IMG/VR virus record: IMGVR_UViG_3300031963_000006
Location: 151,251-215,250 of that record
Reading direction: 5' to 3' (one strand)
DNA length: 64,000 nt
The notes below the pieces were generated by a model. That model was not told where the DNA came from. It saw nothing but the letters and a program-made list of their open reading frames with translations, and searched no databases. The position numbers were made by a program, and so were the translations under genes. The first letter of the stretch is position 1; every line of letters begins with the position of its first letter. Positions 13,361 through 62,735 of the stretch are shown piece after piece.

Positions 13361-13966
13361 ATGATAGAAGTTATCAAATACGGTGATTTCAAGCCGACAG
13401 GTAAACAGAAGAAAAAACAACAAATTATATTACAACACACCTCAAGAAATATTGAGGAATATCTCCTTAGTTTGAAATATAGATTTAACGGTGGGTATAA
13501 AAAAATACCTAACTACGTTGTCAGTCGAGATGGAAAGATATTACAACTTTTAGAAAACGAATCTCACTCTAAAATATTTTCTGAAGAAAACATAAACAGA
13601 AATTCCATAATTATTTCATTGGAAAATTTGGGATGGTTAGAAAAAGAACCATTAAATAATCAATATGTTAACTGGATTGGAGATATTTATAAGGGTGACG
13701 CTTATGAAAAAAAATGGAGAGACTATTTTTTTTGGCAACCTTATACCGAAACTCAAATAGAATACACTGCTAAATTGTGTAGAAAAATTTTAGATGAGAC
13801 AGGAATACCAAGAGAGGTTGTGGAACATAACACACGTATAAATGGAGTTGAGAAATTTAGAGGGGTAACCTCAAAAAGTAATTTCGATAGTGTTTTTACT
13901 GATTTGAGTCCGGCCTTTAATTTTGAAACATTTTTAAAATATTTGAATGATGAACAATTCACATGA
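13361..13966 (+). CDS. N-acetylmuramoyl-L-alanine amidase-like protein (Amidase_2 fold, divergent)
   Basis: IILQHT, NYVVSRDGKI, SIIISLE, YTETQ, DLSPAF. Confidence 0.65.
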   Translation: MIEVIKYGDFKPTGKQKKKQQIILQHTSRNIEEYLLSLKYRFNGGYKKIPNYVVSRDGKILQLLENESHSKIFSEENINRNSIIISLENLGWLEKEPLNNQYVNWIGDIYKGDAYEKKWRDYFFWQPYTETQIEYTAKLCRKILDETGIPREVVEHNTRINGVEKFRGVTSKSNFDSVFTDLSPAFNFETFLKYLNDEQFT

Positions 13967-14555
13967 TGAAATTAAAAAATTATTAAAAGCTTCGAGGAGT
14001 ATGCTCTCGAATAATACCATCAACGAACAGATAAGTGAGATTAAGAATAGATATGGTATTATTACAGAACAGGGTTCGGACTTAGCGTCAGATAACATCA
14101 CTAAAAAAATGAATATTGCTAAGTCTGTTGAGGATAAAATCGAAGACGATACTGAACCCGACAGAGATAAAAGTCAGGGTTATAGAATATCAGGGGGAAT
14201 AATGGTTTTACACGGAAAAGATTCCTCAGATTTAGAATTGACAACCGACGATAAAATCGCGTTCCAAGAAACAATGGATGAGTTTGTTAATGAGGTATCA
14301 GACTTGGTAGATTTTAATAAATTAAACGTATATCCAAACAATGTTGAATGGTCAGGAAAAATTATCGATTTTGATATTGAATTTTTCTTTTCAATAGGTG
14401 AAGACGGAGGAATGTACATTAATGGAGATATGATTAAGGCTGATGAAAATTTTGTGGAGATGATTAATAAGTTAAAAACTTATTATGATAAGTTCAAGTC
14501 AAAATGGGCTAAAGTTTTGGCTTCACGTAAAAAAACAAATAAGGTAGAAAAATGA
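13947..14555 (+). CDS. Hypothetical protein
   Basis: ORF; INE/ITE motifs in the N-terminus. Confidence 0.75.
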   Translation: MMNNSHDEIKKLLKASRSMLSNNTINEQISEIKNRYGIITEQGSDLASDNITKKMNIAKSVEDKIEDDTEPDRDKSQGYRISGGIMVLHGKDSSDLELTTDDKIAFQETMDEFVNEVSDLVDFNKLNVYPNNVEWSGKIIDFDIEFFFSIGEDGGMYINGDMIKADENFVEMINKLKTYYDKFKSKWAKVLASRKKTNKVEK

Positions 14556-14899
14556 ACGAAATTTTAAAAACAGTATTGTTATTTGTTATAGTAGCTTTGG
14601 TGGGATATTCAGTTTTCTTGACTAATGGTATAAAAACTGATGTTCAATCGCACTATGATAAGATTGATAGTTTACAAATATCTATAGATTCCGCAACGGC
14701 TGTAAACTCAATGATAGACGAAAAATTACTAAAATTAGATGCCGACATAAACAATGTGACTAACGAAATTTTGGCGGTAGACCAAACAATAAACGATATT
14801 AAAATTCAAACAAATGGTAAGGTTATTAATGTTGATAAGTATACTCATACTGAGCTTAAAAAGTTTTTCTCAAAAAGATACAACTCAGCTGGAAATTAG
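14552..14899 (+). CDS. TM + coiled-coil protein (spanin-like architecture, unproven)
   Basis: N-terminal TM and coiled coil; overlaps the next gene. Confidence 0.6.
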   Translation: MNEILKTVLLFVIVALVGYSVFLTNGIKTDVQSHYDKIDSLQISIDSATAVNSMIDEKLLKLDADINNVTNEILAVDQTINDIKIQTNGKVINVDKYTHTELKKFFSKRYNSAGN

Positions 14900-15218
14900 T
14901 ACTCAGACTGCACGACTGATTATAAAAGATTTAATTAAGTATGATGGATGTAAAGACGAGTTGACTCAAGCTTATATAAAAATTGGAAAGCTTGAAGAAA
15001 GAGAATCTCTTAAAGACACCATGATAACTTATTTGGAAAAGAAAGATTCAACATACCAATTTATTATTCAACAAAAAGATGGTCAAATAGTTGAGTACGG
15101 TAAAGTAAATACAAAACTCCAAAGTGAATTGGACTCTAAGAATAAACAATTCAAATGGTATAAACGAGGTACTATCGCAGGAGGAGTATTTCTTATACTA
15201 TTACTATTAGCAATTTAA
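14814..15218 (+). CDS. Signal peptide + coiled coil + C-terminal TM protein
   Basis: Hydrophobic ends. Confidence 0.65.
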   Translation: MVRLLMLISILILSLKSFSQKDTTQLEISTQTARLIIKDLIKYDGCKDELTQAYIKIGKLEERESLKDTMITYLEKKDSTYQFIIQQKDGQIVEYGKVNTKLQSELDSKNKQFKWYKRGTIAGGVFLILLLLAI

Positions 15219-15220
15219 CT

Positions 15221-15466
15221 ATGGCACTTTCAGATTCAGATAAAAAACAAATAGAAGTTATGATTCGAAAGGAAATTAAGGATTTCATCGGAAGTAACAC
15301 TATGAGACAGTATGAGGATAAGATTTTAGAATTAGTGTCTAAAGAAATCCGTAGAGGTAAACTTGAAAGTGACACTAAAGAAATAGTAATAAAAGTCTTC
15401 AGAGAGTTCTACAATTTTATGTGGTCTCAACGAGGATATTGGGAACCAAGATTAAAAAATGCGTAA
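15221..15466 (+). CDS. Hypothetical protein
   Basis: In-operon ORF. Confidence 0.7.
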   Translation: MALSDSDKKQIEVMIRKEIKDFIGSNTMRQYEDKILELVSKEIRRGKLESDTKEIVIKVFREFYNFMWSQRGYWEPRLKNA

Positions 15467-16394
15467 AATTAAATTAACCGAGAATATTCTCAAGCAACTT
15501 TCTTCAAAAATTTCAGACAATATTTTGTCTAATTCTAATATTATGTCAACAAATCCTATCGAAGGAATGAAAGACATTAATGTTTTACAAAAAAAGATAG
15601 AGAGTAATGAGGAAATTGAAGAAAAATGGTCTGAAAAATACAAAAAAAGTATAGATTGTAACAATCCCAAAGGATTTAGCCAAAAAGCCCATTGCCAAGG
15701 AAGAAAAAAGAAAGTAAAGGAAGAGATTGAAGAATCTGAAGTTAAAGACATAAAACTGTATGACTTGGCAAAACAACATTCTAAAAGTGATTCTACTGAA
15801 AAAATTTCCAAAATATATAATATTCTCAAGAGACAACTTAAAAAAGGGATGAAAGTTGAAATGGAACATGAGATGGGTCTTAAAAAGGCTAAGAAAATTG
15901 CAATGGACCACCTTAAGGAAGACCCAAAATATTATGATAAACTAGAGAAGATAGAGAATAAGGAAGCGACTGGTGCAGGGGTGGCCGGAGGTTTTGTTGG
16001 ACCTGTAGGATTTAATCCTGATAGTGATTTTGTTAAGAAAAGCTTTAAAGAGACTCCTAAAAAAATTGAATCAAATGAAGCCACGGGCGCTTCCTCAGCT
16101 GGCGCATATGACGCTCCTGGATTTGAAGATGTTAATATGAAAGGTAATCATGAACGTGGTTCAGGTAAGTCGTTCAAAAAAACACAGATACCCCAAGGAA
16201 AGTTCGTTCAAGTAAAAAAGAAATGTAAAAAGTTTCCTTATTGTAATCAAGGAGATATTAAAGCTTTAAACATATTTGAAAATAACACTCTCAACAAGGT
16301 TATTAAAGATGTTAGTAAAAAGTATAACATCAGTGAACAGGTCGTTAAAAATATTATAGAGTACGAATATAATTTGATAAAAGATAAACTATAA
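15459..16394 (+). CDS. DUF5661-like domain protein
   Basis: GMKVEMEH...KIAMDHLKEDPKYYDKL. Confidence 0.65.
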   Translation: MRKIKLTENILKQLSSKISDNILSNSNIMSTNPIEGMKDINVLQKKIESNEEIEEKWSEKYKKSIDCNNPKGFSQKAHCQGRKKKVKEEIEESEVKDIKLYDLAKQHSKSDSTEKISKIYNILKRQLKKGMKVEMEHEMGLKKAKKIAMDHLKEDPKYYDKLEKIENKEATGAGVAGGFVGPVGFNPDSDFVKKSFKETPKKIESNEATGASSAGAYDAPGFEDVNMKGNHERGSGKSFKKTQIPQGKFVQVKKKCKKFPYCNQGDIKALNIFENNTLNKVIKDVSKKYNISEQVVKNIIEYEYNLIKDKL

Positions 16395-16429: not shown

Positions 16430-17647
16430 ATGAAAAAGTCTTTAAACAACTATATTAATTCGTTAGTAAATAAAATTATTAACGAAACTATTGAAGAAAG
16501 AGCTGACGAATTAGTTACAAAATTAACCGAAGGTGATAAAATGGTTTGTGAACAATGTGGTGGAGAAACGAGAGAGGGAATTTGTGAACAGTGTTCATCT
16601 GGTTCTATGAATGAAACTGATAATTTTGACTATGTTGCTGAAGAAGAGGAATTTGGTTCAGACCCGGCAGGTATGATTGATAAATTCTGTGATACAAGTA
16701 GTGATGAATATAATAAAGCTGCTTGTAAATATCATGAAGAAAGATTTATGGGTGGTGAAGTAAGTGAAAAATTACACGGTGGGCAGAAAAAAATTGATGT
16801 TGCAGAACCTAAAGGTAAAATTACAGGTGCTGACTTCAAAAAATTAAGAAGCATGAAAAAAGAAACTGATGAAGAAGTTGAAGAAGGTAATGCTTTTACA
16901 GGCGCTTTGGCTAATGCTAAAGAAGAAGGATATGAAACTTTTGAAGTTGATGGTAAAAAGTATAATGTTAAAGAATCTATTAGAATGACAGAAAGTGAAA
17001 TGATTGATTTCATTGAAAAAATTGTTTTGCAGGAGGAGGAAAAATTAAAGTCTATGGGTAAAACTAAAGGTCTTAATGTTTATCAAAAGGCCCACACCGC
17101 TTCAGGAAAGGAAAATAAAGAATACTTACAATCTGTCGTTAAAAAAATGAAGGATTATTTGAAAGATGGTTCTAAAGGAGAATATGATATGAATCCTGAA
17201 ATATTTCCAAAGGGAAACGGAGAGTTAGCTAAGATGGATAAAAAGGCTTACACACCTTCAGATGCGGTTAAAGATTATACAGATAATTTTATAGCTGCGG
17301 GATTAGAAAATCTTGATTATGATGAAATTCATCCTAATGAGGATTGGGTTGATGACAATGTTGAGGGTTCTTCAAGAACTGGAAACAATCCTGAATGGGT
17401 AAATACAGGTAAATCTGATGTTAACAAAAAAAGAAATAAAATTAGAAAAGACAACATGTTAGCGAAGGTTAAAAGAAAAGCTTACAATAAGTCACCACAA
17501 CCAGTCGTTCAAGACACTCAAGATGGAGAAAAGGCTAATAAGATTTTGATGAAATTGGAGTCAGTTGATGAAAAAACCACAAAACAAATAAATGAAGAGT
17601 TTGAAAGAATGAAAAATTTAATTGGTTATAATCAAAAGACTCAATAA
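16430..17647 (+). CDS. Acidic protein, probable head/internal protein
   Basis: TATTTAT upstream; several (I/L/M)xE sites; C-terminal INEEFERMKNLIGY. Confidence 0.7.
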   Translation: MKKSLNNYINSLVNKIINETIEERADELVTKLTEGDKMVCEQCGGETREGICEQCSSGSMNETDNFDYVAEEEEFGSDPAGMIDKFCDTSSDEYNKAACKYHEERFMGGEVSEKLHGGQKKIDVAEPKGKITGADFKKLRSMKKETDEEVEEGNAFTGALANAKEEGYETFEVDGKKYNVKESIRMTESEMIDFIEKIVLQEEEKLKSMGKTKGLNVYQKAHTASGKENKEYLQSVVKKMKDYLKDGSKGEYDMNPEIFPKGNGELAKMDKKAYTPSDAVKDYTDNFIAAGLENLDYDEIHPNEDWVDDNVEGSSRTGNNPEWVNTGKSDVNKKRNKIRKDNMLAKVKRKAYNKSPQPVVQDTQDGEKANKILMKLESVDEKTTKQINEEFERMKNLIGYNQKTQ

Positions 17648-22083: not shown

Positions 22084-23475
22084 ATGAGATTTACACAACT
22101 TCTAACAAATTTGATTTTGGAACAATCACGTTTCCAAGTTCTGTATGACAAAATGGTTAAACCCGCAAAAGGTTCTGACGAGGAGGGTAAAAAGGCAAAA
22201 GGATTGATGCCCTTTGAAGTATTAAAACATATTATTTTTGCTGACCCAACCACAGTAGGCCCAAGATTTACAGATAATGAAAGTCGCTTGGAGTTTATAT
22301 TAACTGCCACAGAGGAAGAAATGGAGAAAGTTAAAGTTGGTAAGTATACTCAATGGTTGTTGAAGAATTTTGTGGCTCCTACGTTTGATGACATAGATGA
22401 GAGAGCTAATATAGAAAAAGGTACTACCGAGTATAAAAGAATGATGAAAGATTATCAAAGTTTGTTCTTGGAAGACTTACACAAAATTACCGAAGACCTT
22501 AAAAAGTACGAGAGATTTAAGAATCAGTTACCTCAAGATAAAAGAGATATCAATAAAATCTCCGCTAGTGAACTTTATGATTTGGTTAAAGATTTTAAAT
22601 TAGAAAAGACCAAAGCATCCAAAGAGGAAAAAGAACAAGCTAAAACATCATACCAATATCCTGGTAGTGAAATCATGTACAGAGGTTCTGATTGGACTTT
22701 GATTAAGATTGAAGATAAAGGTGAGATTGGAAAAAATGCCGCAATATTTTTCGGAGGTTACCAAGATGGAGATAATGGTGAATCAAGATGGTGTACATCC
22801 GCACCTGGATTAAGTTACTTTAATACATACATTAAAGATGGACCTTTGTATGTTGTTTTACCAAACGATGATAAAGGACAAGTTGGTAAAAGAACAGGAC
22901 TTCCAGTTGAAAGATATCAGTTTCACTTCCCATCTAATCAATTTATGGATAGACACGATAGAACTGTAAGTTTAGTTGAATTGTTAAATGGAAAAATGTC
23001 TGAACTTAAAGAGTTCTTTAAACCTGAATTTGCAAAAGGTTTGGTAAGTAAAGGTGGAAATAAAGTTGAAGTTAATTATCCTGATAGTTCGGCGGGTAAG
23101 TTTATTGCTCTATACGGATTTGAAGAATTATTTGAAAGTTTACCTGATACAATTGAACATCTTATTGTTACAAACAAATCAAAAGAAAATATTGCTTTGG
23201 ATGTTCCAGAAAGTATCACAAGATTTAAGAACCTTGATGCGTTACTAATGTCAAATATTGTTAGAACATTACCTGAAAATTTGGGTGACCTGAAAAATTT
23301 GAAGTTTTTGAATTTGGCAAATAACAAAGATTTAGTATCTTTGCCAGAATCAATCAAGGACATACCTAATTTGGCCCTACTCAACCTTAAAGGAGCAAAT
23401 CCAAATGTTGAGATACCACCGGCACTTAAAGAGGTATTGTCTGACGAAGGAGAAGGATTTTACTATCTTACTTAA
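22084..23475 (+). CDS. Protein with a WCTSA-motif domain and C-terminal leucine-rich repeats
   Basis: LPENLGDLKNLKFLNLANNKDLVSLPESIKDIPNLALLNL; TATTTAT upstream. Confidence 0.8.
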   Translation: MRFTQLLTNLILEQSRFQVLYDKMVKPAKGSDEEGKKAKGLMPFEVLKHIIFADPTTVGPRFTDNESRLEFILTATEEEMEKVKVGKYTQWLLKNFVAPTFDDIDERANIEKGTTEYKRMMKDYQSLFLEDLHKITEDLKKYERFKNQLPQDKRDINKISASELYDLVKDFKLEKTKASKEEKEQAKTSYQYPGSEIMYRGSDWTLIKIEDKGEIGKNAAIFFGGYQDGDNGESRWCTSAPGLSYFNTYIKDGPLYVVLPNDDKGQVGKRTGLPVERYQFHFPSNQFMDRHDRTVSLVELLNGKMSELKEFFKPEFAKGLVSKGGNKVEVNYPDSSAGKFIALYGFEELFESLPDTIEHLIVTNKSKENIALDVPESITRFKNLDALLMSNIVRTLPENLGDLKNLKFLNLANNKDLVSLPESIKDIPNLALLNLKGANPNVEIPPALKEVLSDEGEGFYYLT

Positions 23476-29588: not shown

Positions 29589-29680
29589 ATCTTTTTATTT
29601 TTAAACGTTTATATATCATAAATATCTAAATTTGGTATATATTGTAAATATTTTATTTGAATTAACAAATATTTATGATT

Positions 29681-33489: not shown

Positions 33490-33675
33490 ATGAGAGGTAA
33501 AATTCTATCTGAAGAACAATTTAAAGATAAGTTAATCCAAATTTATAATGAGGAGAAACATTCTTTGGTCAAAGAAAAAATTCAAATGTATGTTGAAAAA
33601 AGAAAGTCTTCCGTTAACGAAGAGGTTCAAGATTCATTAATAACATTGAAGAATATTTTTGGAGGTAAAAAGTAA
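33490..33675 (+). CDS. Small protein with an ILSE leader
   Basis: TATTTAT upstream. Confidence 0.6.
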   Translation: MRGKILSEEQFKDKLIQIYNEEKHSLVKEKIQMYVEKRKSSVNEEVQDSLITLKNIFGGKK

Positions 33676-49480: not shown

Positions 49481-49481
49481 A

Positions 49482-49787: not shown

Positions 49788-49799
49788 AACGTATAAATA

Positions 49800-50117: not shown

Positions 50118-50118
50118 A

Positions 50119-50502
50119 TTAAGAGATATTAGCGTTTCTCACATCAAATACTTTATATTCGGGGAACACAACATTAAAGGCGTCTGACATTAAATATTTA
50201 CCGTGAACATACCAAAAAGGATGTGGAAGTATCTTTTCAAACAAGTCACCAAATTCTCTACTATAATATAATTCACCTGTCATACCATCCTCATATATAA
50301 CAAAAACACATATTGTTTCACCATTAGAATTGGATATGAAAATTCTATTAGTTCCATCATCATATGAATCAAATTGGTCAACAATGTAAGGAATAATTTT
50401 ATCCTTTATCTTATTGTATTGTTCCTCATATTGAAAATCCCTCCAATCCCTTTCAAGTTCGGAGATAAGTTTAAGTTGTGATTCTGTGATTATATATTTC
50501 AT
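50119..50502 (-). CDS. MKYIITESQ-leader protein with a different body
   Basis: Shares only the leader. Confidence 0.8.
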   Translation of the reverse strand: MKYIITESQLKLISELERDWRDFQYEEQYNKIKDKIIPYIVDQFDSYDDGTNRIFISNSNGETICVFVIYEDGMTGELYYSREFGDLFEKILPHPFWYVHGKYLMSDAFNVVFPEYKVFDVRNANIS

Positions 50503-50505
50503 GTT

Positions 50506-50817
50506 TTAAAAATAATATACAACGATATCTGATTGAACATCAACCGCACTATAATGTGTGCCAGTTTTACTTTCAACCCACTTAGAAATTGCGGAAATAG
50601 CATCGATATTACTCAAAGAAAAGAAAGAAACGATTTCATCCATTAATTTTCTATCAATCGTACACCAATAACTATTGAATCTAATTTGAGCGTATTCATC
50701 TTTCTCTGAATTAAGGAAATAACCGTTTATTCCATACTCCATATAAACAAAGTCCTGATTATCCAAATACTTAAAGATTAGGTTTTCAATTTGAGATTCG
50801 GTGATTAGGTATTTCAT
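50506..50817 (-). CDS. MKYLITESQ-family core paralog
   Basis: True start 50817 (track ORF over-extended); TATTTAT 5 nt upstream. Confidence 0.85.
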   Translation of the reverse strand: MKYLITESQIENLIFKYLDNQDFVYMEYGINGYFLNSEKDEYAQIRFNSYWCTIDRKLMDEIVSFFSLSNIDAISAISKWVESKTGTHYSAVDVQSDIVVYYF

Positions 50818-50842
50818 ATGATTATAAATATAACGTATTACT

Positions 50843-51160
50843 CTATCTAACGTGTACTTCCCTAACATTCGTATCCAATTTATTTTCAACCCATCTACCG
50901 ATAATATATTTAGAATCATTAAAGTCCAATGAAAAGAATGTGGTAATCTCATCAATCAATTCATGATTTATCCAACAATCACCATCTCGATAGAAATTAA
51001 TTAATGAATCAGTATATAAATCTTCACTTGAATTAAGAAAGTGAATTATATTGCTAAACCCAAAAGACGTTTTAGGTGATTTTTTTATAATAAAGTCCTG
51101 ATTATCGAGGTACTTAAAAACAACATTATCAAGCTTAGATTCGGTGATAAGATATTTCAT
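50843..51160 (-). CDS. MKYLITESQ-family core paralog
   Basis: MKYLITESKLDNVVFKYLDNQDF. Confidence 0.85.
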   Translation of the reverse strand: MKYLITESKLDNVVFKYLDNQDFIIKKSPKTSFGFSNIIHFLNSSEDLYTDSLINFYRDGDCWINHELIDEITTFFSLDFNDSKYIIGRWVENKLDTNVREVHVR

Positions 51161-51172
51161 ATGATATAAATA

Positions 51173-51502
51173 TTAGTTAGGAGTTCTTAAAGAAGAAACC
51201 ATATCTTCAGTGACAAAGAATATGTTGGTAACCTTCATTTTTAAATTATTTTCAACCCACTTACCAATAACTTTTTTAGAATTAGATTCTCGCAGAGAAA
51301 AGAAGGAAGAAATTTCGTTAACCAATTTATAAGATATAAAACACCACTCATCATTTTCATCATATCTAATCTGAGCATATTCATCATTTTCGGAATTAAC
51401 AAAAAATAAACTAACACTATCGCCGACAACAATAAAGTCCTGATTATTCAAGTACTTAAAGATTACATTATCAATTTGTGATTCGGTGATAATATATTTC
51501 AT
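51173..51502 (-). CDS. MKYLITESQ-family core paralog
   Basis: MKYIITESQIDNVIFKYLNNQDF. Confidence 0.85.
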   Translation of the reverse strand: MKYIITESQIDNVIFKYLNNQDFIVVGDSVSLFFVNSENDEYAQIRYDENDEWCFISYKLVNEISSFFSLRESNSKKVIGKWVENNLKMKVTNIFFVTEDMVSSLRTPN

Positions 51503-51524
51503 ATGATATAAATACTAGTTATAT

Positions 51525-51830
51525 CTATCTAATTATAATTTCTTTAACTCTTCTACCCAAAGTATTTTCAACCCATCTGGCAATAACATATTTAGAACCA
51601 TCAAATTCCATAGAGAAGAATTCTGCAATTTCATTAATTAACTCAAAACTCATGACACACTCACCACCACTTCTATAGTATTGGATTAATCCGCCCGAAA
51701 ATTCATCATTTTCTGAATTAACGAAGTAAGTTATATTATCACTATTCATTTTCTTAATAATAAAGTCCTGATTATCCAAATACATGAATATAAGGTTATC
51801 AATCTGTGATTCGGTGATAAGATATTTCAT
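51525..51830 (-). CDS. MKYLITESQ-family core paralog
   Basis: MKYLITESQIDNLIFMYLDNQDF. Confidence 0.85.
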   Translation of the reverse strand: MKYLITESQIDNLIFMYLDNQDFIIKKMNSDNITYFVNSENDEFSGGLIQYYRSGGECVMSFELINEIAEFFSMEFDGSKYVIARWVENTLGRRVKEIIIR

Positions 51831-51842
51831 ATGGTATAAATA

Positions 51843-52178
51843 TTAATTATAATAGGGTATTCTCAACGCAAACCACTTCGTGTTGTTGCGCCATTCGGTG
51901 TTTGTGACCTTCATTTGTAGTCTATTTTCAACCCATCTACCAATAACTGGTTCAGAATCATAATGTGACATAGAAAAGAAGGTGGAAATTTCTTCAATTA
52001 ATTTATAATGTACATAACACCAATTATCATTTTTATCATATTTAATTTGAGCGTATACATCATTCACTGAGTTCACGAAGTATATTTTTTCATCAAAGTT
52101 AATCTGAATAAAATCTTGGTTATCCAAATACTTAAAGATTACTTTATCAATTTGTGATTCGGTGATTAGGTATTTCAT
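51843..52178 (-). CDS. MKYLITESQ-family core paralog
   Basis: MKYLITESQIDKVIFKYLDNQDF. Confidence 0.85.
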   Translation of the reverse strand: MKYLITESQIDKVIFKYLDNQDFIQINFDEKIYFVNSVNDVYAQIKYDKNDNWCYVHYKLIEEISTFFSMSHYDSEPVIGRWVENRLQMKVTNTEWRNNTKWFALRIPYYN

Positions 52179-52486
52179 TTGATTAATATTACGTCTATTG
52201 TTATACCATAAACTTCATACGGGGGAAAACCTGTATTGGGGCTATAACCACTTGTTTTAATATCCAAATAAGTCAATATTGTTCTCCTAATCTCACGTTC
52301 AAAATTTCGTTCTTTTAATTCGTCAGGGTTATAATGGTTAGGGTTGGTTATGTATGAATCATCAATATCATAAAAATAAACATCAATTAATATCTCATCA
52401 TCATATTCACTCTTTCTAACTTTAATCTTTTCAGGTGAGTATAACGATTCAATCAACTTAACAATGGCTTTAATTTTACTGTTCAT
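52175..52486 (-). CDS. Unrelated gene inside the array, sharing the upstream TTTATATCATATG signal
   Basis: Start MNSKIK. Confidence 0.75.
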   Translation of the reverse strand: MNSKIKAIVKLIESLYSPEKIKVRKSEYDDEILIDVYFYDIDDSYITNPNHYNPDELKERNFEREIRRTILTYLDIKTSGYSPNTGFPPYEVYGITIDVILIK

Positions 52487-52496
52487 ATGATATAAA

Positions 52497-52826
52497 TTAC
52501 GACCATATACCACCGACGCGTTTCTGAGCCGCGGAGAGAGGTTTAATGTGAGACACCTCTACCTCTAAAGTTTTTTCAACCCATCTAGCGATAACTACTT
52601 TAGAATCAGATTTATCCATAGAAAAGAAGTCGGAAATTTGATTAATTACTTTGTCACTAAGCATACAAACTCCACTTTCTTTATTGTATACAATTATAGA
52701 GGTGACATCTCCCTCAGATTTTTTAAAGTATATTTTATTATCCTTTTTAACTTGAACTAATCCTTGACTATCCAAATACATGAATATAAAGTTATCCATT
52801 TGTGATTCTGTTATAATGTATTTCAT
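52497..52826 (-). CDS. MKYLITESQ-family core paralog
   Basis: MKYIITESQMDNFIFMYLD...FFSM...VIARWVE. Confidence 0.85.
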   Translation of the reverse strand: MKYIITESQMDNFIFMYLDSQGLVQVKKDNKIYFKKSEGDVTSIIVYNKESGVCMLSDKVINQISDFFSMDKSDSKVVIARWVEKTLEVEVSHIKPLSAAQKRVGGIWS

Positions 52827-56400: not shown

Positions 56401-56739
56401 ATGAAAAAAGTTATAAGATTAACGGAGTCTGATTTAACAAAACTTGTTAAGAGGATAATTAACGAAATGGATAATGATGATTTTTATTATAAGGCAAAAC
56501 CTGATATGAATTATTATTATGATAAATTTGATAATGTGGGTCCATCTGATGATGAATTCGGTGACTATGATGTTGATGAGTATGGTGAAGACGAATTTGA
56601 AAGATTCATGTCAAAATATCCTTTTGGGGATAAACAGAATACTTTCCCTGATGATGAACATGGAAGAAGATATTTCAAGGGGTATTCCAAATCACATGGT
56701 GGTAAATTTCCTGTATATAAAAGAAAAGGTAAAATGTAA
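56401..56739 (+). CDS. Protein with an MKKVIRLTESDL leader
   Basis: TATTTAT upstream; terminator downstream (56768-56798). Confidence 0.8.
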   Translation: MKKVIRLTESDLTKLVKRIINEMDNDDFYYKAKPDMNYYYDKFDNVGPSDDEFGDYDVDEYGEDEFERFMSKYPFGDKQNTFPDDEHGRRYFKGYSKSHGGKFPVYKRKGKM

Positions 56740-57841: not shown

Positions 57842-57958
57842 ATTTAATAAGACATTAACCCCCTTTCTTTTGATTGGGGGTTTTTTATTTTCTAAAAATT
57901 TTTTCGACGGTTCCCGATTCCCCCTACCCCCTTTTTTATTTCTGATATATTTATTGAT

Positions 57959-58495
57959 ATGAAATTTATTCTTACAGAGTCACAATACGCAGGATTAATG
58001 AAACTAATCAAAAAACATGAAGACGATTTAAGTTTTTTGAAAAGTAGCGTGGTCACATCAATTGAACATGATGTAACAGATTTATTAAACTCCAAGTTTC
58101 AAGGTAGATTTGGACACTATGGTTATATGCAATACCCCTCATTTTTTATTTATCCCGAAAAATTGGCGTCCGAACTTGCGAAATATAATGTAAGGGAACC
58201 ATTTTTGGTTATTGAGTATCATGTAAAAAAATCCACAGGTAAAGTTGAAATTAACATCTTTTGGAATTCAAACATATATTTTGATTATAAAAAAGAAAAT
58301 GGTAGATGGGAAAGACATAGACAACCCAAAAATAGTATTAAGTGGGACTATATAAATAACCCTGATGGACAAGAGGAATTCTTATCTAAATTGGAAAAGA
58401 CCATTAACGGAAGAATTAGTGAAAAGGCTCAAAACAAAATTATTAATGATTTTGAAAAACTTTATTCAGGGCCATCACCTAAGTTTTTTTCCTAA
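57959..58495 (+). CDS. Protein with an MKFILTESQ leader
   Basis: TATTTAT 4 nt upstream. Confidence 0.8.
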   Translation: MKFILTESQYAGLMKLIKKHEDDLSFLKSSVVTSIEHDVTDLLNSKFQGRFGHYGYMQYPSFFIYPEKLASELAKYNVREPFLVIEYHVKKSTGKVEINIFWNSNIYFDYKKENGRWERHRQPKNSIKWDYINNPDGQEEFLSKLEKTINGRISEKAQNKIINDFEKLYSGPSPKFFS

Positions 58496-58696: not shown

Positions 58697-59803
58697 ATGA
58701 ATCTAAAACAAAGAATTAAGTTAATCTTAAATGAAGCTTTAGGAATTCCCGATGATATTGATATGATTGTCAATATCTATACGGACCTTATAATTGATAC
58801 CATTAAAAACGATATTGATAATGTTGACTCCAAAGAAGTTCAAATCAACGTTGAAGGGTATGAAGATGGGGAAGCATTCAAATATGATTTCAAAATAAGT
58901 CCAAAAGAGTCTTGGGAGTATCTTAAAAACTCACCACTTTTCAATATGGAAGATTGGAAGAAGTTTCCAACCTTCATTAATAAAATTAGTTTTTCTTTAA
59001 TTACATTCCCTGATGGAATGTTTGAAGACCGGGGAGTTACATCCCCACAGATTGAAGCAACACATATTTTCCAACCATCAACATTTCAAGTTAAACAAGT
59101 TAAGAAATGGGGTGAAGTTTATGCTATAAGTTCATATGACTTTTCAATTAATATGAAACAGTCCGACCTTGATAATATTGAGAATATTAGAACAAAACTG
59201 AAATCAGTTATCGCTCACGAAATCTTCCACTCATATCAGTTGTATAAAAAATATAAGGGTACATCTAAAGTGGGATTTGGAAAGGAGGCCGTTATGAATT
59301 CTTTCCAACAGATTTTACAGAGTCAGTGGAACCCAGAGTGGAATAACTTTATGAGGGGGATATATTATGCTTTAAGGTTTGAACAACAAGCAAGAACCCC
59401 CCAATTATACTATGAACTCAAAGACAAAGGTATAAGTTCATATGAGGATTTTATGAGAGAACTATCAAAGACAGAATATTTTAATGAGATTAATTTTTTG
59501 AGAAACTTCTCGGCTCAAAAAATGATTGATTCCATTACAAAAATTGAAAGTTTTGAGGACCTAATTTTACAAGGGGCGAAAGGTCAAGAATTTAGAGAGA
59601 ACATAGAAAATTGGAATGAATATCTTCAGATTATTGCTCGTAAGTTAAGGAATAATGGCGTTGATGTTGATAATTTCAGGGGAATAAGTAATAGAGTTAG
59701 ACAAGACCCAAGAACCTTCTTTGAATATTGGGAAAAGTTTTTTGACAAAAGAGCCGAAGAAATGTTTAGAAGAGCAACAAGGATTTACGATAAGATTAAA
59801 TAA
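58697..59803 (+). CDS. HExxH-motif protein with an ILNE leader
   Basis: IAHEIFHSYQ...FEQQAR. Confidence 0.75.
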   Translation: MNLKQRIKLILNEALGIPDDIDMIVNIYTDLIIDTIKNDIDNVDSKEVQINVEGYEDGEAFKYDFKISPKESWEYLKNSPLFNMEDWKKFPTFINKISFSLITFPDGMFEDRGVTSPQIEATHIFQPSTFQVKQVKKWGEVYAISSYDFSINMKQSDLDNIENIRTKLKSVIAHEIFHSYQLYKKYKGTSKVGFGKEAVMNSFQQILQSQWNPEWNNFMRGIYYALRFEQQARTPQLYYELKDKGISSYEDFMRELSKTEYFNEINFLRNFSAQKMIDSITKIESFEDLILQGAKGQEFRENIENWNEYLQIIARKLRNNGVDVDNFRGISNRVRQDPRTFFEYWEKFFDKRAEEMFRRATRIYDKIK

Positions 59804-59873: not shown

Positions 59874-60218
59874 ATGAATAATATTGAACAATATAGAAAA
59901 AGGTTCTTTATGTTAATGGAGTCATCAATGGGTGATGTTAAACCATTAATCTTGGAAACCAGTTTAGATTTGAATACTGCAACCATATATTGGATGAGTT
60001 GTGGAGGTGATGAAGTTGAATTAACTCCCGATTCTAAGAAACTGTTATTACCTGGTAAGGTAATAAATAATACACAATATTATTATTTTGATTCTGAACC
60101 TAATGACGCCATTGGTGAATATAAAATTATGGAATGTCTTGGACCTGAGATTGGCAAACAAGATGATTTGTATATTGATGGGGATTCGGGTAAATTATTC
60201 TTAACTAAGAATTATTAA
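59874..60218 (+). CDS. Hypothetical protein (LME...PLILE leader)
   Basis: TATTTAT 4 nt upstream. Confidence 0.75.
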   Translation: MNNIEQYRKRFFMLMESSMGDVKPLILETSLDLNTATIYWMSCGGDEVELTPDSKKLLLPGKVINNTQYYYFDSEPNDAIGEYKIMECLGPEIGKQDDLYIDGDSGKLFLTKNY

Positions 60219-60223: not shown

Positions 60224-60499
60224 ATGGACTACATTGTAAATTACTCACAACTTGCGGCATGCATTCGTAGAAGGTTTTCTATTGAAGACATAAATCAGAT
60301 TATACGTTCAGTTAAGGAACAGATTGAAGATGGTGAGAGTGTGGACACGGCGGTGTATGATACAATCAGACATTATATCGCATTAAAACGACCTACCCGT
60401 ATTAATGACGAGGGAACCGAACAACAATATTGGGATTCTTATATCAAATATGAAATCCCCCTTGTTGAATTTGTTAAACATGTTTTGGAATTAAAATAA
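60224..60499 (+). CDS. Hypothetical protein
   Basis: MDYIVNYSQL, leader-like. Confidence 0.7.
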   Translation: MDYIVNYSQLAACIRRRFSIEDINQIIRSVKEQIEDGESVDTAVYDTIRHYIALKRPTRINDEGTEQQYWDSYIKYEIPLVEFVKHVLELK

Positions 60500-60638
60500 T
60501 TCCTAAAATTTTTCCCTTCGGGTTATCAATCCCCCTACCCCCTTTTTTTAAAAGGGTTCCCCATTGTTGAAAAAAAATTTCTGGAAAAAATTTTGGGGAA
60601 TTGGGACTTTGTGGTATCTTTGTCAAAAATTAATCACA

Positions 60639-61562
60639 ATGAGTAAAGTTACAATGGAAATCGGACAACGTTTAATTATTGAGAAGTATGTGCAAGATGC
60701 TTATGACAGATTGAAAAATGTTCCAAACCCCAAAATGACAGATAGTCTTCATAAATTCATATGTGATTGTGTGGGACATCTTCCGGCAACCTATGGTCCT
60801 AAGATTCAGAATAAAATTATTCGTGAACTTAAAGCCATTGTTGTATCAAGTGATAAGGAACGAGGTGACTTTAGAAAGAATGTCACATTCTTTGAGGTTA
60901 AATGTTCATTCCTTTCAAAGGGGGTTAGCTATTCAATTACCAATATTCGAAATTGGCATAACTTTGACTATTATGTTCTTTGTTTTATTGATGTTACCAA
61001 TAACTTTACTCCAAACTTCTATGTTATCAAAAAGGATGATATCAATAACTTCAAACTAAGGGGGATGAACGGTACTGCCGAATCTAATACCGTTAATCAG
61101 AATGTTGGTATGCGTACCGCCATTCAAGTTGATTCCCCTGATATGGAACTTTTGAAAAGTTTGAATCTTTTGAAGGACAATAGTTTTGAATCTTTATATG
61201 AGTTTGTTGATTCATTCAAGATGAAAAAGACAAAACCTAATGGATTTAAATTTAAATTCAATGGACAGAATTTTGATAGTGATAATGTTACCGAGAACTA
61301 CATTAATTTCTTGAAATATTTTTTGTATATTAATCAGGGTTCCAATTCTTTGGGTATTCAAAACATTCAACGTTCTTTGGGTAAGTTCTTTTCTTTCAAT
61401 GTTAAAAATCTTTCAAGTTGTACAAGAAAGAAAAAACAATATGTTAAGATTATGGATACGTTCTATGTTTCAACATACACATCAACCCAAAAGAAAATTG
61501 GTCATATTCAGAAAATATGTGACTCTTATCCATATGAACTTAACTTTGAATTCTATGGTTAA
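60639..61562 (+). CDS. Possible PD-(D/E)XK endonuclease-like protein
   Basis: RGD...FEVKCS...FDYY; TATCTTTG upstream. Confidence 0.55.
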   Translation: MSKVTMEIGQRLIIEKYVQDAYDRLKNVPNPKMTDSLHKFICDCVGHLPATYGPKIQNKIIRELKAIVVSSDKERGDFRKNVTFFEVKCSFLSKGVSYSITNIRNWHNFDYYVLCFIDVTNNFTPNFYVIKKDDINNFKLRGMNGTAESNTVNQNVGMRTAIQVDSPDMELLKSLNLLKDNSFESLYEFVDSFKMKKTKPNGFKFKFNGQNFDSDNVTENYINFLKYFLYINQGSNSLGIQNIQRSLGKFFSFNVKNLSSCTRKKKQYVKIMDTFYVSTYTSTQKKIGHIQKICDSYPYELNFEFYG

Positions 61563-61673
61563 TTTGCTATCCCCCATTTCTTATTGTAGAGTGGGGGATT
61601 TTTTTCTATAAATTTTTTTCGACGGTTTCCGATTCCCCCTACCCCCTTTTTTATTTATAGTATATTTATTTAT

Positions 61674-62735
61674 ATGTCTAAAAGATTTGTAATTAGTGAA
61701 AACGAAATCCGAGAAATCAGGTCAATGTACGGATTATTAAATGAACAAGAAAGAGTTATAAATGCGTCTACATCTCCTGAAAAAATGTCCAACTTTCCTG
61801 GAAATCAAAAATTTGGTTTGAGAGGGGATAAAACTAAAGAAAATTTTTATTTCAAGTCAACATTAAAAAATTTAATATTTGCCAGTACTGGTGATGCAAC
61901 AAATTATCTCTCAAGTTTCACTCCTACAAATGATGCTAAACAATATGTTGACTACATAAAAATTGGGGATAATGAATTAACAAATCAAGGAAGTATTAGT
62001 TTTGATTTGAGAACTTTACCTTCCTCAACTGAAGTTATTGCGACTCACAATGGTTTATTGTTATTGAGAAGAATGATGAATGAATTGGGAGGACAAAAAA
62101 ATGGAAAAGTAACTTTGAGTATGAGTTCGGAGGTTAGAGAGTCGGGGCAAAAAAACTATACAATATCAGGTTTATCTTCCTCAATAATTGCCGGATTCAA
62201 TGGGTTATCATCTGTTTTGGGAGTTTTGATTGTTCCCCAACAAGAAAGAGAGAAAATAAGTGATGGATACGCTGTCCAATATTTTAAAGATAAAAGTGAC
62301 GATGAACTTAAAAGTATGGCCCTAAAATTTATGAAAAACATAACATCTTACTATTTTTTGGCAAAACAAGATGTTCCCCAAATAGATACAATAATTACTG
62401 ATAAACAATTTACAACTGCTGCTGACACAAGTGCATTTGAAACTTATTATGGTAATGGACTAACCAGAGATAATTTATCTGTTTTAAATTCATCTTGGAA
62501 AAAATTACAAGACGAGTTAAAAAGTATTATGATATCCAACATGAAATTGTATTACCCTGAGGATTTCCAAGGGTTAGCCGAGAAAGCGGCTGAGATGGTT
62601 AAATCAGCATATTCTACAGATAAGTTTAATGAAAATTACAGTAGATTATTCAAACAAAGTGAACTTGGTAGATTATCTCCAATCCAACAAGGTACAAAAA
62701 CCCAATCTTCCACTTCTTATCAATTAGGAAAGTAA
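61674..62735 (+). CDS. Protein with a VISE...LLNEQ leader
   Basis: TATTTAT 4 nt upstream. Confidence 0.8.
   Translation: MSKRFVISENEIREIRSMYGLLNEQERVINASTSPEKMSNFPGNQKFGLRGDKTKENFYFKSTLKNLIFASTGDATNYLSSFTPTNDAKQYVDYIKIGDNELTNQGSISFDLRTLPSSTEVIATHNGLLLLRRMMNELGGQKNGKVTLSMSSEVRESGQKNYTISGLSSSIIAGFNGLSSVLGVLIVPQQEREKISDGYAVQYFKDKSDDELKSMALKFMKNITSYYFLAKQDVPQIDTIITDKQFTTAADTSAFETYYGNGLTRDNLSVLNSSWKKLQDELKSIMISNMKLYYPEDFQGLAEKAAEMVKSAYSTDKFNENYSRLFKQSELGRLSPIQQGTKTQSSTSYQLGK

What the first reader, a model, noticed from the sequence alone, without database searches (positions are those of the whole stretch)
13947..62735. Window-wide coupling of a TATTTAT promoter with an N-terminal (I/L)xE leader on unrelated proteins: candidate capsid-cargo addressing system
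Seen: at least 20 non-homologous ORFs begin with a short basic/hydrophobic leader ending in (I/L)xE, e.g. MKFILTE-SQ (57959), MKFIISE (39810), MKFIIKE-S (47811), MKKVIRLTE-SD (56401), MSKRFVISE (61674), MKNILISE (36823), MKKILSE-S (33675), MTKNLKLSE (39410), MAISE (45338), MRKIKLTE (15459), ..LILE-Q (22084), ..ILIE-Q (29681), ..ILNE (58697), ..IINE (16430). Almost all sit behind TATTTAT or in an operon that does. Genes behind the other two promoter types mostly lack it. The bodies include a DHH phosphoesterase, an HExxH protein, ferritin-like, LRR and DUF6878-like proteins. Known: the T4 prohead protease gp21 cleaves after Glu in (I/L)xE contexts and removes targeting leaders. Inference: a portable late-promoter plus leader module that turns any captured gene into packaged, matured and injected cargo.
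Basis: partly seen in the sequence, partly recalled or inferred. Interest (0 to 1): 0.8.

Follow-up and report, generated by a model that had tools for sequence, protein, structure and literature searches.

The report
Phage-wide N-terminal protein address tag
A 239-kb T4-like jumbo phage of Bacteroidota puts a short conserved N-terminal tag ending in Ile/Leu-x-Glu on dozens of unrelated late proteins. The same tag heads thousands of phage-only protein families, and it most likely sends them into the capsid and is then cut off, as in phage T4 but on a far larger scale.

Summary
The loose (I/L)xE rule is only about 1.8-fold enriched. A tighter N-terminal motif occurs in 15/101 genes against 2/1190 internal windows.

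The leaders fall into families: A1 (MKKhIRLTESDLxxhVKRhIxE), A2, B, short forms, and a missed tandem array of 10 paralogs. They continue past the window's right edge.

TATTTAT is the late promoter: it precedes 51/163 genes against 1.7 expected and heads the virion operons. Leader genes are enriched behind it (OR 6.5, p=4e-5; replicated in about 100 other phage contigs, p=5e-9).

The A1 leader occurs in 8,316 protein clusters. It is almost always at residue 1, and conservation stops exactly at I-x-E-Q. It gave one match in 185,579 cellular genomes and at least 120 in viral contigs.

The phage is T4-like. Relatives carrying the leader encode a Peptidase_S77 (gp21) prohead protease, and their capsid protein has an LINE|A site where T4 gp23 is cut.

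A cleaved capsid-targeting propeptide is the best reading (about 0.55), but packaging and cleavage were not shown. Promoter and leader are not one DNA module. The window's own protease gene was not reached.

The parts
56401..56739 (+). Gene with the canonical A1 long leader MKKVIRLTESDLTKLVKRIINE|MDND (112 aa); hxE Glu at residues 9 and 22
   Evidence: (49.7 bits with a profile built only from database sequences). TATTTAT box at 56377-56383. No Pfam or PHROG family.
61674..62735 (+). Gene with the A2 long leader MSKRFVISENEIREIRSMYGLLNE|QERV (353 aa); Glu at residues 9 and 24
   Evidence: E9, L21 and E24 are invariant in 11 homologues. AF2 gives residues 1-55 low confidence, an isolated helix at 9-22, and the body from about residue 56. 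Boxes at 61652-61658 and 61663-61669.
59874..60218 (+). Gene with the type B leader MNNIEQYRKRFFMLMESSMGDVKPLILE|T (114 aa); Glu at residues 16 and 28
   Evidence: The same leader type heads P0013, an orthologue of the 61674 body, and two genes right of the window. It is also found on 106-kb and 321-kb IMG/VR contigs. Box at 59863-59869.
57959..58495 (+). Gene with the short leader MKFILTE|SQY (178 aa)
   Evidence: Box at 57948-57954, 4 nt before the ATG.
39810..40361 (+). Gene with the short leader MKFIISE|HQQ (183 aa)
   Evidence: The orthologue in L001 has MKFIISENQL. Box at 39799-39805.
47811..48233 (+). Gene with the short leader MKFIIKE|SKF (140 aa); third gene of an operon that starts at 47138
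   Evidence: The operon's box is at 47116-47122.
36823..37137 (+). Gene with the short leader MKNILISE|KQL (104 aa)
   Evidence: Box at 36803-36809.
33490..33675 (+). Gene with the short leader MRGKILSE|EQF (61 aa)
   Evidence: Box at 33470-33476.
33675..35075 (+). Doubtful member: MKKILSE|SG on a weakly DHH-like 466-aa protein, in an operon with 33490
   Evidence: The DHH match is below the Pfam cut-off (E=5e-4) and starts at residue 25.
38718..39410 (-). Gene with the short leader MTKNLKLSE|EQL (230 aa); DUF6878 at the C-terminus
   Evidence: The Pfam domain covers residues 166-220 only. Box at 39415-39421.
44886..45338 (-). Doubtful member: MAISE|KQI (150 aa)
   Evidence: The orthologue in L001 reads MRENKFTDKQM, with Asp in place of Glu. 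Box at 45347-45353.
15459..16394 (+). Gene with the short leader MRKIKLTE|NIL (311 aa; DUF5661 at residues 116-168)
   Evidence: It has no TATTTAT box of its own.
49082..52826 (-). Tandem array of 10 paralogous genes of 101-132 aa. Most start MKY(I/L)ITESQ(I/L)DNxIFKYLDNQDF. Starts are at 49480, 49787, 50117, 50502, 50817, 51160, 51502, 51830, 52178 and 52826. An eleventh, unrelated small gene (52175-52486) lies inside the array.
   Evidence: AF2 model with pLDDT 92: residues 1-6 form a loose tail, and helix 7-19 is part of the fold. Boxes at 49793-99, 50824-30, 51166-72, 51508-14, 51836-42 and 52832-38.
41442..41834 (-). Divergent relative of the array family: MEYEINQNRLDEVVIKFLENYF (130 aa)
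   Evidence: Box at 41839-41845.
13947..14555 (+). Class E2: no extreme N-terminal motif, but TINE27|Q and a further IITE|Q (202 aa)
   Evidence: This class is the weakest; it was defined post hoc.
16430..17647 (+). Class E2: MKKSLNNYINSLVNKIINE19|T on a K/E-rich 405-aa protein with a high coding score
   Evidence: Box at 16408-16414.
22084..23475 (+). Class E2: MRFTQLLTNLILE13|Q (463 aa; weak LRR match at the C-terminus)
   Evidence: Box at 22060-22066.
29675..31075 (+). Class E2: ...VKNILIE19|Q on an acidic coiled-coil 466-aa protein (E 14%, D 10%)
37627..38076 (+). Class E2: ...KRGLLSE21|Q (149 aa).
   Evidence: Box at 37611-37617.
41022..41429 (+). Class E2: ...IGKILVE18|T (135 aa)
   Evidence: Box at 40999-41005.
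48571..49062 (+). Class E2: ...IKEIMEVLNE21|Q (163 aa)
58697..59803 (+). Class E2: MNLKQRIKLILNE13|A (368 aa; contains HExxH)
4032..4038 (-). TATTTAT box heading the structural operon (genes of 71, 849, 1223, 422 and 1634 aa). This marks the box as the late promoter.
11444..12244 (+). Phage-encoded sigma-70-family factor (266 aa) next to the gp46/47-like genes. It is a candidate reader of TATTTAT.
   Evidence: Sigma70_r2 and Sigma70_r4. The link to TATTTAT is inference only.
57899..57958 (+). Repeated intergenic cassette (C-rich block CCCCCTACCCCC, a T-run, then TATATTTAT). Further copies lie at 59814-59873 and 61614-61673.
   Evidence: 92% identity between the 57959 and 61674 copies, 75-77% to the 59874 copy. 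Identity ends at the ATG.

Best explanation
The window lies in the variable arm of a 239-kb T4-like jumbo phage of Bacteroidota, probably Flavobacteriia, resembling the recently described 'moraphages'.

Dozens of late genes, at least 31 in the window and about 40 in the 116 kb that contain them, encode proteins whose first 7-28 residues form a conserved tag. The tag has a basic start, a short hydrophobic stretch, an (L/I)(T/S)E turn and an amphipathic helix. In the long forms it has a second (I/L)-x-E at residues 19-28, after which unrelated 'bodies' begin.

Proposed mechanism (inferred, not shown): the tag works like the T4 capsid-targeting sequence. The genes are transcribed from the TATTTAT late promoter together with the head genes. 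The tag binds the assembling prohead core. The phage's gp21-type (Peptidase_S77) protease then cuts after the Glu of (I/L)-x-E, which frees the cargo inside the capsid so that it is delivered with the DNA.

Shown here: the motif and its N-terminal restriction; peptide-level selection; the association with the late promoter; the sharp conservation boundary at I-x-E; restriction to phages; unrelated bodies; the T4-like nature of the genome; and the presence of S77 protease, T4-type portal and Gp23-type capsid protein, with matching predicted cut sites, in phages that carry the same tag.

Inferred: binding to the prohead, cleavage, packaging and injection.
For: 1. N-terminal motif enrichment: 15/101 genes against 2/1190 internal windows. 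In the same genome only 1 of about 59 genes in the structural and replication arm carries it, against about 30/104 in the variable arm.
2. Synonymous variation, including Ser codon-family switches.
3. TATTTAT lies upstream of 51/163 genes against 1.7 expected, and upstream of the gp13, gp25, tail and fibre operons. Leader association OR 6.5, p=4e-5. Replicated in IMG/VR: 59/102 against 342/1188, p=5e-9.
4. A1 leader logo: about 4.2 bits per position to residue 20, 2.0 bits at residue 21, E22 100%, Q23 85%, under 1 bit from residue 25. The 119 proteins fall into 64 unrelated bodies.
5. 8,316 clusters at 50% identity match at E<=1e-3. In the 150 listed hits the match nearly always starts at residue 1.
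6. One match in 185,579 cellular species genomes against at least 120 in viral contigs.
7. Orthologous bodies carry alternative leaders (A2 or B) that end at the same invariant L..E.
8. In the AF2 model of the 61674 protein the leader is an isolated helix ahead of a low-confidence linker.
9. T4-like core genes.
10. Phages with the leader encode Peptidase_S77 (81-85 bits), Portal_T4 and Gp23. In some, leader genes sit between the protease and the scaffold-like gene.
11. Predicted cut sites in the clade's head proteins: the capsid protein has SFLINE60|A against T4 SFLTE65|A; the protease has GILIE against T4 LLIE9; a protein of about 314 aa in the head module has IIKKVIxE|ATGDSSGSRGSY with a free P2.
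12. T4 precedent: L/I-X-E cleavage, a 10-20 aa CTS on unrelated internal proteins, multiple cut sites per propeptide (PMC9026906, PMC5694885, PMC3012670).
13. Some cargo bodies bind peptidoglycan (PG_binding_1, OmpA, LysM) yet lack a signal peptide, as expected for proteins delivered by the virion.
Against: - There is no proteomic or biochemical evidence, and no cultured relative.
- The protease and capsid genes of the window's own contig were not found in the 162 kb read.
- In an unbiased set of head modules only 1/55 has an A1-leader gene next to the protease, so that adjacency is occasional.
- In the array family the helix after T-E is part of a compact fold. Several paralogues and orthologues replace the first Glu with Q, R or D.
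- Some proteins carry an internal copy of the tag. That fits a general binding module as well as it fits a processed polyprotein.
- The short-leader and E2 classes rest on short motifs defined partly after seeing the data.
- RNA data were too sparse to confirm transcription starts.
Confidence: 0.55

Rival explanations
1. The tag is an uncleaved docking or oligomerisation module. It is a short strand plus an amphipathic helix that tethers many late proteins to one common partner other than the prohead interior. The partner could be the capsid surface, the tail or baseplate, a membrane site, or the tag itself. No proteolysis is involved.
For: - Internal in-frame copies without a Met.
- A type B leader followed by an A-like helix in one protein.
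- The helix is integral to the fold in the array family.
- Glu is not invariant in short-leader paralogues.
- A1-leader genes are rarely adjacent to the protease.
Against: - Conservation stops exactly at I-x-E-Q with only P2 free. A plain helix gives no reason for this pattern, whereas it matches the T4-type cut sites predicted in the clade's own capsid protein and head protein.
- E9 and E22 are 100% conserved.
- Alternative leader types converge on the same terminal hh-x-E.
Confidence: 0.27
2. There is no addressing function. The proteins form one large, fast-diverging paralogous superfamily that keeps an ancestral N-terminal structural element, and the late-promoter link only reflects where such genes accumulate.
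For: - The tandem array shows that duplication is active.
- The 41442 gene is a distant member of that array family.
- Leader genes cluster in one variable arm of the genome.
Against: - Bodies include unrelated, independently known domains (PG_binding_1, OmpA, LysM, GNAT, DUF5661, DUF6878).
- 64 BLAST-unrelated groups among 119 proteins.
- Orthologous bodies carry different leader types.
- The conservation boundary is sharp rather than a gradual decay.
Confidence: 0.12
3. The pattern is an artefact of composition, or a constraint on translation initiation in an AT-rich genome that lacks Shine-Dalgarno sites (Lys/Ile-rich starts on near-leaderless mRNAs).
For: - The loose (I/L)xE rule is barely above expectation.
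- TATTTAT lies 4-5 nt from many ATGs, which implies near-leaderless mRNAs.
Against: - The tight motif: 15/101 genes against 2/1190 internal windows.
- Only 1 of about 59 genes in the other arm of the same genome carries it.
- Synonymous codon variation.
- 8,316 database clusters with a 23-residue near-invariant peptide.
Confidence: 0.03

Closest known systems
T4 capsid-targeting sequence (CTS) on internal proteins IPI/II/III and Alt, removed by prohead protease gp21 (PMC9026906, PMC3012670)
   Same: A conserved N-terminal propeptide sits on otherwise unrelated proteins. It ends in (L/I)-x-E. The genes are expressed late. The phage has a T4-type head machinery, including Peptidase_S77 in phages that carry the tag. 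Propeptides can hold more than one cut site.
   Different: - The tag here is 22-28 aa (short forms 7-9 aa), against 10-20 aa in T4.
- There are at least four leader families in one genome.
- There are dozens of carriers per genome and thousands of cargo families, against a handful in T4.
- Some proteins have internal copies.
- Similarity to the T4 CTS sequence was not examined.
- Function here is only inferred.
Propeptides of ejection and inner-body proteins of phiKZ, 201phi2-1 and SPN3US, cut by diverged gp21 homologues at S/A-x-E (PMC5694885, PMC9026906)
   Same: These are jumbo phages that package many different proteins. Cleavage is after Glu, with few other determinants. N-termini are conserved on diverged paralogues (SPN3US gp53/gp54).
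   Different: Most of those propeptides are longer than 100 aa and are not one shared tag. P3 is S/A there, against I/L/V here. The phage lineage and hosts are different.
Hyperplastic internal-protein loci and mobile promoter/stem-loop cassettes of T4-type phages (from my own knowledge of Repoila et al. 1994, Comeau & Krisch 2005 and Arbiol et al. 2010; not re-read here)
   Same: Variable gene cassettes are bounded by repeated regulatory DNA. Here the repeat is a cassette of a C-rich block, a T-run and TATATTTAT, 92% identical between two sites. One RNA contig shows a different cassette after gene 57959.
   Different: The repeated DNA here ends at the ATG and does not include the leader-coding part.
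Moraphages, large aquatic Bacteroidota phages (PMC12619734)
   Same: Genomes of 200-307 kb, mostly from freshwater, with predicted Flavobacteriia hosts. Shared T4-like genes include gp13, gp25, gp6, gp19, sheath, a sigma factor, UvsW, PolB, glutaredoxin, DnaJ and a prohead core protease in 25 genomes.
   Different: Membership of the window's contig was not tested by phylogeny. The paper does not mention any N-terminal tag.
Cargo-loading or encapsulation peptides of encapsulins and bacterial microcompartments (from my own knowledge)
   Same: A short amphipathic helix followed by a linker directs unrelated cargo into a protein shell.
   Different: Those peptides are not removed by a protease, are often C-terminal, and are cellular rather than viral.

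Membership tests
T4-type capsid-targeting propeptide system | The phage encodes a gp21-type prohead protease (Peptidase_S77) | tested here: inconclusive
   Met in relatives: loci that carry the same A1 leader also encode Peptidase_S77 at 81-85 bits against a cut-off of 27. More than 513 relatives of that protease exist in JGI metagenomes. Not reached in the window's own contig: 162 of 239 kb were read. The moraphage paper lists a prohead core protease as near-core (PMC12619734).
T4-type capsid-targeting propeptide system | The tag lies at the extreme N-terminus of the precursor | tested here: met
   Nearly all of the 150 listed hits match from residue 1. The Met is 7 aa before the core Thr in 89/107 IMG/VR leaders. 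All window examples start at the Met. Exception: a minority of proteins have a second, internal copy.
T4-type capsid-targeting propeptide system | The propeptide ends in (L/I)-X-E with the middle residue free | tested here: met
   A1 logo: I20 99%, residue 21 at 2.0 bits, E22 100%. All 11 long leaders of this genome end in hh-x-E at residues 19-28.
T4-type capsid-targeting propeptide system | The tag is conserved while the mature parts are unrelated | tested here: met
   64 BLASTP-unrelated body groups among 119 proteins. No BLASTP similarity among the window's carriers outside the array. Bodies carry different Pfam domains.
T4-type capsid-targeting propeptide system | Late expression together with the head genes | tested here: inconclusive
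   The sequence association is strong: TATTTAT heads the virion operons and is enriched before leader genes. Transcription itself was not observed; the one metatranscriptome was too sparse.
T4-type capsid-targeting propeptide system | The protein is physically inside capsids and is cut after the Glu | not testable with these tools
   This needs virion proteomics or N-terminomics, or an in vitro protease assay. No cultured relative exists.
Moraphage lineage (PMC12619734) | Genome over 200 kb, aquatic source, Bacteroidota host, shared T4-like core genes | tested here: met
   A 238,964-bp contig from a JGI metagenome; a lake-water metatranscriptome holds part of the window. Bacteroidota signals: SprB, Por_Secre_tail, TAnnTTTG boxes. 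Core genes present: gp13, gp25, sheath, tube, sigma factor, UvsW, PolB, gp32. Phylogenetic placement was not done.
Ribbon-helix-helix (CopG/Arc-like) N-terminal strand-helix | Match to RHH domain models, with a second helix following | tested here: not met
   No Pfam family at E<=0.01 for 56401 or the other carriers. Sequence after the first helix is unconserved. The resemblance is to the strand plus first helix only.
Sec or lipoprotein signal peptide | An uninterrupted hydrophobic core followed by a signal-peptidase site | tested here: not met
   Read directly from the sequence: the tag has charged residues every 3-4 positions (K2 K3 R6 E9 D11 R14 K17 R18 E22). True signal peptides in the same genome look different, for example MKKIIVFSFISLYLFSC at 63022.

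The most novel reading that the evidence does not exclude
A near-invariant 23-residue tag (MKKIIRLTESDLxRIVKRVIxE|Q) and its sister tags form a phage-restricted, clade-wide address code. Under this reading the code marks the whole set of proteins that T4-like jumbo phages of Bacteroidota load into their capsids and inject. That set would comprise thousands of unannotated cargo families, including multi-tag polyproteins cut apart by the prohead protease. It would be a ready-made catalogue of early-acting effectors, such as anti-defence, cell-wall and host-takeover proteins. The tag could also serve as a packaging signal.
Probability: 0.4. Interest if true: 0.85.

Novelty: new variant of a known kind. 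Interest (0 to 1): 0.72.

Why it matters
If the tag is a capsid-targeting propeptide, one short sequence would identify the injected protein cargo of a whole clade of uncultured jumbo phages directly from metagenomes. There are 8,316 clusters at 50% identity for the A1 form alone, and almost none has a known function or is modelled by Pfam or PHROGs.

That would make a long-standing question directly testable: what large phages deliver into cells besides DNA. It would extend the T4 CTS paradigm from a handful of proteins to dozens per genome. It would also give annotation pipelines a simple new feature.

Even if the tag is not cleaved, a phage-only peptide module this conserved on this many unrelated proteins implies an important common binding partner that has yet to be found.

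Tried and rejected
- **Cultured relatives.** Megablast and tblastn against deposited phage genomes gave no close relative. The best hit was 24% identity, with the polymerase.
- **RNA genes.** No tRNA or Rfam hits.
- **Fold of the 61674 body.** Nothing significant against the PDB.
- **Array-family profile.** It barely reaches the other leaders, so the array is a separate family that shares only the first ~10 residues.
- **Literature search for the peptide strings.** Only noise.
- **Walking the source contig** with all 12 look-ups covered record positions 14,980-177,123. It found tail, baseplate, replication and glycosyltransferase genes but no portal, protease or capsid gene. PHROGs on nine unannotated large proteins found only a tail tube and a C1-like peptidase.
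- **Leader next to the protease.** I first read this adjacency as a conserved feature. The unbiased protease-anchored sample (1/55) showed it was a selection effect, so I withdrew that argument.
- **crAssphage as an external control.** It is not in the collection. The other arm of the same genome served as the control instead.
- **RNA evidence for transcription starts.** One lake metatranscriptome gave three short contigs, which is uninformative.
- **'Promoter plus leader' as one DNA module.** Rejected, because DNA identity stops at the ATG.

Full report
**What the window is.** The window is AT-rich (31% GC) and densely packed with small genes. It has no close relative among deposited phage genomes. 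Exact-protein look-ups place it on a 238,964-bp JGI metagenome contig, Ga0315902_10000023; record position = 87,715 minus window position.

I walked that contig and joined the pieces, which overlapped with no mismatch, into about 152 kb; a last look-up extended the read region to 162 kb. To the left of the window lie fibre, baseplate and tail genes (SprB repeats, GPW_gp25, T4_baseplate, sheath, tube, Phage_T4_gp13). There is also a T4-like replication set: gp32, a DnaB-type helicase, RNase H, ribonucleotide reductase, a UvsW-like helicase and PolB. The window itself holds gp46/47-like SbcCD genes next to a sigma-70-family factor.

Host-type signals point to Bacteroidota. They are TTTG/TAnnTTTG promoters, 'FSQ/YAQ' signal peptides, SprB, and a fasciclin protein with a T9SS Por_Secre_tail domain. 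The gene set matches the freshwater 'moraphages', which are 200-307 kb, have predicted Flavobacteriia hosts, and have a prohead core protease in 25 genomes (PMC12619734). I did not test membership by phylogeny.

**The observation.** The rule as written is weak: [IL]xE occurs in the first 20 residues of 40/101 genes, against 25% of internal windows and 21.4±4.1 after shuffling. A longer motif is very strong: [ILV][ST][EQ]x[QEDK][hydrophobic] in the first 14 residues occurs in 15/101 genes against 2/1190 internal windows.

The leader codons vary synonymously, including TCN/AGY serine switches, so the peptide is what is conserved. Outside that array the carriers show no BLASTP similarity once the first 25 residues are removed.

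The sequence just right of the window makes the anatomy clear. There are long leaders of 22-28 residues in three families:
- A1: MKK(I/V)I(R/K)LTES(D/Q)L..(I/L)(V/I)KR(V/I)I.E
- A2: M(S)KR(F/L).I(S/T)E(E/N)E...I....Y..hh.E
- B: M.NI..Y(K/R).RF(Y/F).LMES.MGDV(K/R)PIh.E

Each has two hydrophobic-x-Glu sites, at about residues 7-16 and 19-28. There are also short leaders of 7-9 residues, such as MKFILTE. A weaker class has only the distal hh-x-E-[Q/T], found in 9/102 genes against 3/543 windows; I defined that class post hoc. Leader genes are confined to the variable arm: about 30/104 genes there against 1 of about 59 in the structural and replication arm of the same genome.

**The promoter.** TATTTAT lies within 30 nt of the start codon of 51/163 genes, against 1.7 expected from its density. 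The consensus is (A/g)TATTTAT(A/t), and there is no clear -35 element. It heads the operons for fibres, gp25, gp13 and other virion genes, so it is the late class. The spacing to the ATG is bimodal, at 4-5 nt and 13-17 nt, which implies very short mRNA leaders.

17/25 leader genes have the box, against 34/138 others (OR 6.5, p=4e-5; with the array removed OR 9.8, p=7e-5). Most of the remaining leader genes are downstream in operons. The single public lake metatranscriptome that holds any of this stretch was too sparse to show transcription starts.

The 60 nt upstream of 57959 and 61674 are 92% identical, but that identity ends at the ATG, where coding identity is about 30%. So the repeated unit is an intergenic terminator/promoter cassette and does not include the leader.

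**How widespread the tag is.**
- Scoring only residues 1-40 of an A1 protein found 1,117 clusters in the 61-194 aa size range.
- A leader-only profile searched against 1.84 billion representatives found 8,316 clusters at E<=1e-3 and 1,014 at E<=1e-10. In the 150 listed hits the match nearly always starts at residue 1.
- In 119 aligned examples, information content is about 4.2 bits per position up to residue 20. Residue 21 has 2.0 bits, E22 is 100%, Q23 is 85%, and positions from 25 on have under 1 bit. The bodies fall into 64 BLASTP-unrelated groups.
- A back-translated pattern matched once in 185,579 bacterial and archaeal species genomes, on a 3.3-kb contig of a Bacteroidetes MAG.
- In those independent loci the Met is 7 residues before the core Thr in 89/107 leaders. 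TATTTAT precedes 59/102 leader ORFs against 342/1188 other ORFs (p=5e-9).
- Half of the loci carry homologues of window-genome genes even with the leader removed, at a median of 66% identity.
- Neither Pfam nor PHROGs models the tag, and almost all bodies are unannotated. The few recognisable domains include PG_binding_1, OmpA, LysM and GNAT.

**Link to head assembly.** Several loci that had been fetched only because they encode the leader contain a portal (Portal_T4, 252 bits), a prohead protease (Peptidase_S77, 81-85 bits against a cut-off of 27) and a capsid protein (Gp23, 240 bits). In at least five distinct contigs, one or two leader genes sit next to the protease, in most of them between it and a very acidic scaffold-like gene of about 500 aa.

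I then checked this against 80 head modules retrieved through the protease alone. Only 1/55 has an A1-leader gene in that slot. The adjacency is therefore occasional, and I do not use it as an argument.

The following does hold across the clade:
- The capsid protein has five conserved hydrophobic-x-Glu sites in its first 60 residues. The last is SFLINE60|A(T/A)S, upstream of VFPIVRRVF...VQAM. T4 gp23 is cut at SFLTE65|AEIGG, upstream of MVRRAIP...VQPM.
- The protease begins ...KGILIE, as T4 gp21 begins ...LLIE9.
- A protein of about 314 aa encoded after the capsid gene begins ...IIKK(V/I)(I/L)xE|(A/T)(T/S)G(D/E)SSGSRGSY. P3 and P1 are fixed and P2 is free, much like T4 gp24, MAKINELLRE|STTTNSNS.

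These predicted sites have the same form as the leader junctions VINE|A, VITE|Q and LLNE|Q.

According to the literature, gp21 cuts after Glu in L/I-X-E. Propeptides of 10-20 residues target unrelated internal proteins to the prohead core. Asp at the last position blocks processing but not targeting. Propeptides often hold several sites (PMC9026906, PMC5694885, PMC3012670).

**Structure.** In the 61674 protein, modelled from 11 homologues, residues 1-55 have low confidence. The leader is an isolated helix (residues 9-22) and the confident fold starts near residue 56. The body has no PDB match. Its homologues keep E9, L21 and E24 invariant, and one orthologue carries a type B leader in place of A2.

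In the array family (pLDDT 92), residues 1-6 form a loose tail, and the helix that starts at T-E-S-Q (residues 7-19) belongs to the compact fold. Only a 7-residue tail could be removed from these proteins.

**Evidence against the targeting model.**
- The first Glu is replaced in some paralogues and orthologues: TQTQ, NQEQ, DREQ, and FTDKQM for ISEKQI.
- Some database proteins contain a second, internal, Met-less copy of the tag. One protein of this genome has a B leader followed by an A-like helix. These fit a processed polyprotein, but they fit a general binding module equally well.
- The protease of this very contig was not reached.

**Verdict.** The most likely reading (about 0.55) is a greatly expanded, T4-style capsid-targeting propeptide system cut at (I/L)-x-E by an S77 prohead protease. 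The main rival (about 0.27) is an uncleaved docking helix for some other common partner. Simple shared ancestry (about 0.12) and composition or translation effects (about 0.03) fit poorly.

I file the finding as a new variant of a known kind. Its scale, its restriction to phages and its absence from annotation resources make it worth experimental follow-up.

Noticed in passing
window 4032-61669 (32 boxes listed): The spacing between TATTTAT and the ATG is bimodal, at 4-5 nt and 13-17 nt. The same classes appear in other phages of the clade. The short class implies leaderless or nearly leaderless late mRNAs.
   Followed up: partly
window 57899-57958, 59814-59873, 61614-61673: A repeated intergenic cassette: ...TTTTTTCGACGGTT(C/T)CCGATTCCCCCTACCCCCTTTTTTATT..TATATTTAT.. 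It is 92% identical between two copies and ends at the ATG. It may act as a recombination site for swapping gene cassettes.
   Followed up: partly
window 58440-58539: One lake metatranscriptome contig matches up to 58539 and then continues with a different sequence, CTGATATATTTATTCTTATATGAAGTATAT. This is another TATTTAT cassette followed by ATG AAG TAT AT (MKY...). It suggests a strain variant with a different leader gene after gene 57959.
   Followed up: no
database proteins P0153-P0163, P0170, P0175: These proteins have two copies of the A1 tag. The second is internal and lacks a Met, for example ...NYGKLTESDLIRIVNRVIKKQ... They could be fused cassettes or polyproteins.
   Followed up: partly
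window 11444-12244 (+): A phage-encoded sigma-70-family factor (Sigma70_r2 and r4) sits beside the gp46/47-like genes, where T4 has gp55. It is a candidate late sigma factor for TATTTAT.
   Followed up: no
window 35621-36052 (+) and 20031-20957 (+): By eye, the N-termini look like SmpB (…NKKARYEYEF…) and a J-domain protein (…YYDILGV…). Neither was checked against a family library. DnaJ is reported as common in moraphages (PMC12619734).
   Followed up: no
window 63177-64000 (continues to about 64319; L011:11504-12646): The phage encodes a fasciclin-domain protein with a T9SS C-terminal sorting domain (Por_Secre_tail). This is a host-type secretion signal on a phage gene.
   Followed up: no
L019 (CANKZE010000111.1, 3.3 kb): This is the only match to the leader pattern in 185,579 species genomes. 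It lies on a small contig binned into a Bacteroidetes MAG, so it is probably phage DNA co-binned with its host.
   Followed up: no
window 1-1247 (-): The odd Ser/Trp-rich plus-strand ORFs at 190-798 are shadows of the 3' part of a 1223-aa structural gene on the minus strand. That gene continues beyond the window's left edge.
   Followed up: yes
L011:14081-15952 and L011:18949-19665 (window-equivalent 65754-67625 and 70622-71338): Leader-bearing proteins with peptidoglycan-binding domains (PG_binding_1, as in endolysin C-termini; OmpA) and no signal peptide. LysM appears on some database carriers.
   Followed up: partly
L139-L218 head modules (e.g. L192:14842-15786): A conserved protein of about 314 aa is encoded after the capsid gene. 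It has a 12-14 residue N-terminus ending in I-x-E, followed by an invariant ATGDSSGSRGSY. It is a good first candidate for testing the clade's protease specificity.
   Followed up: partly
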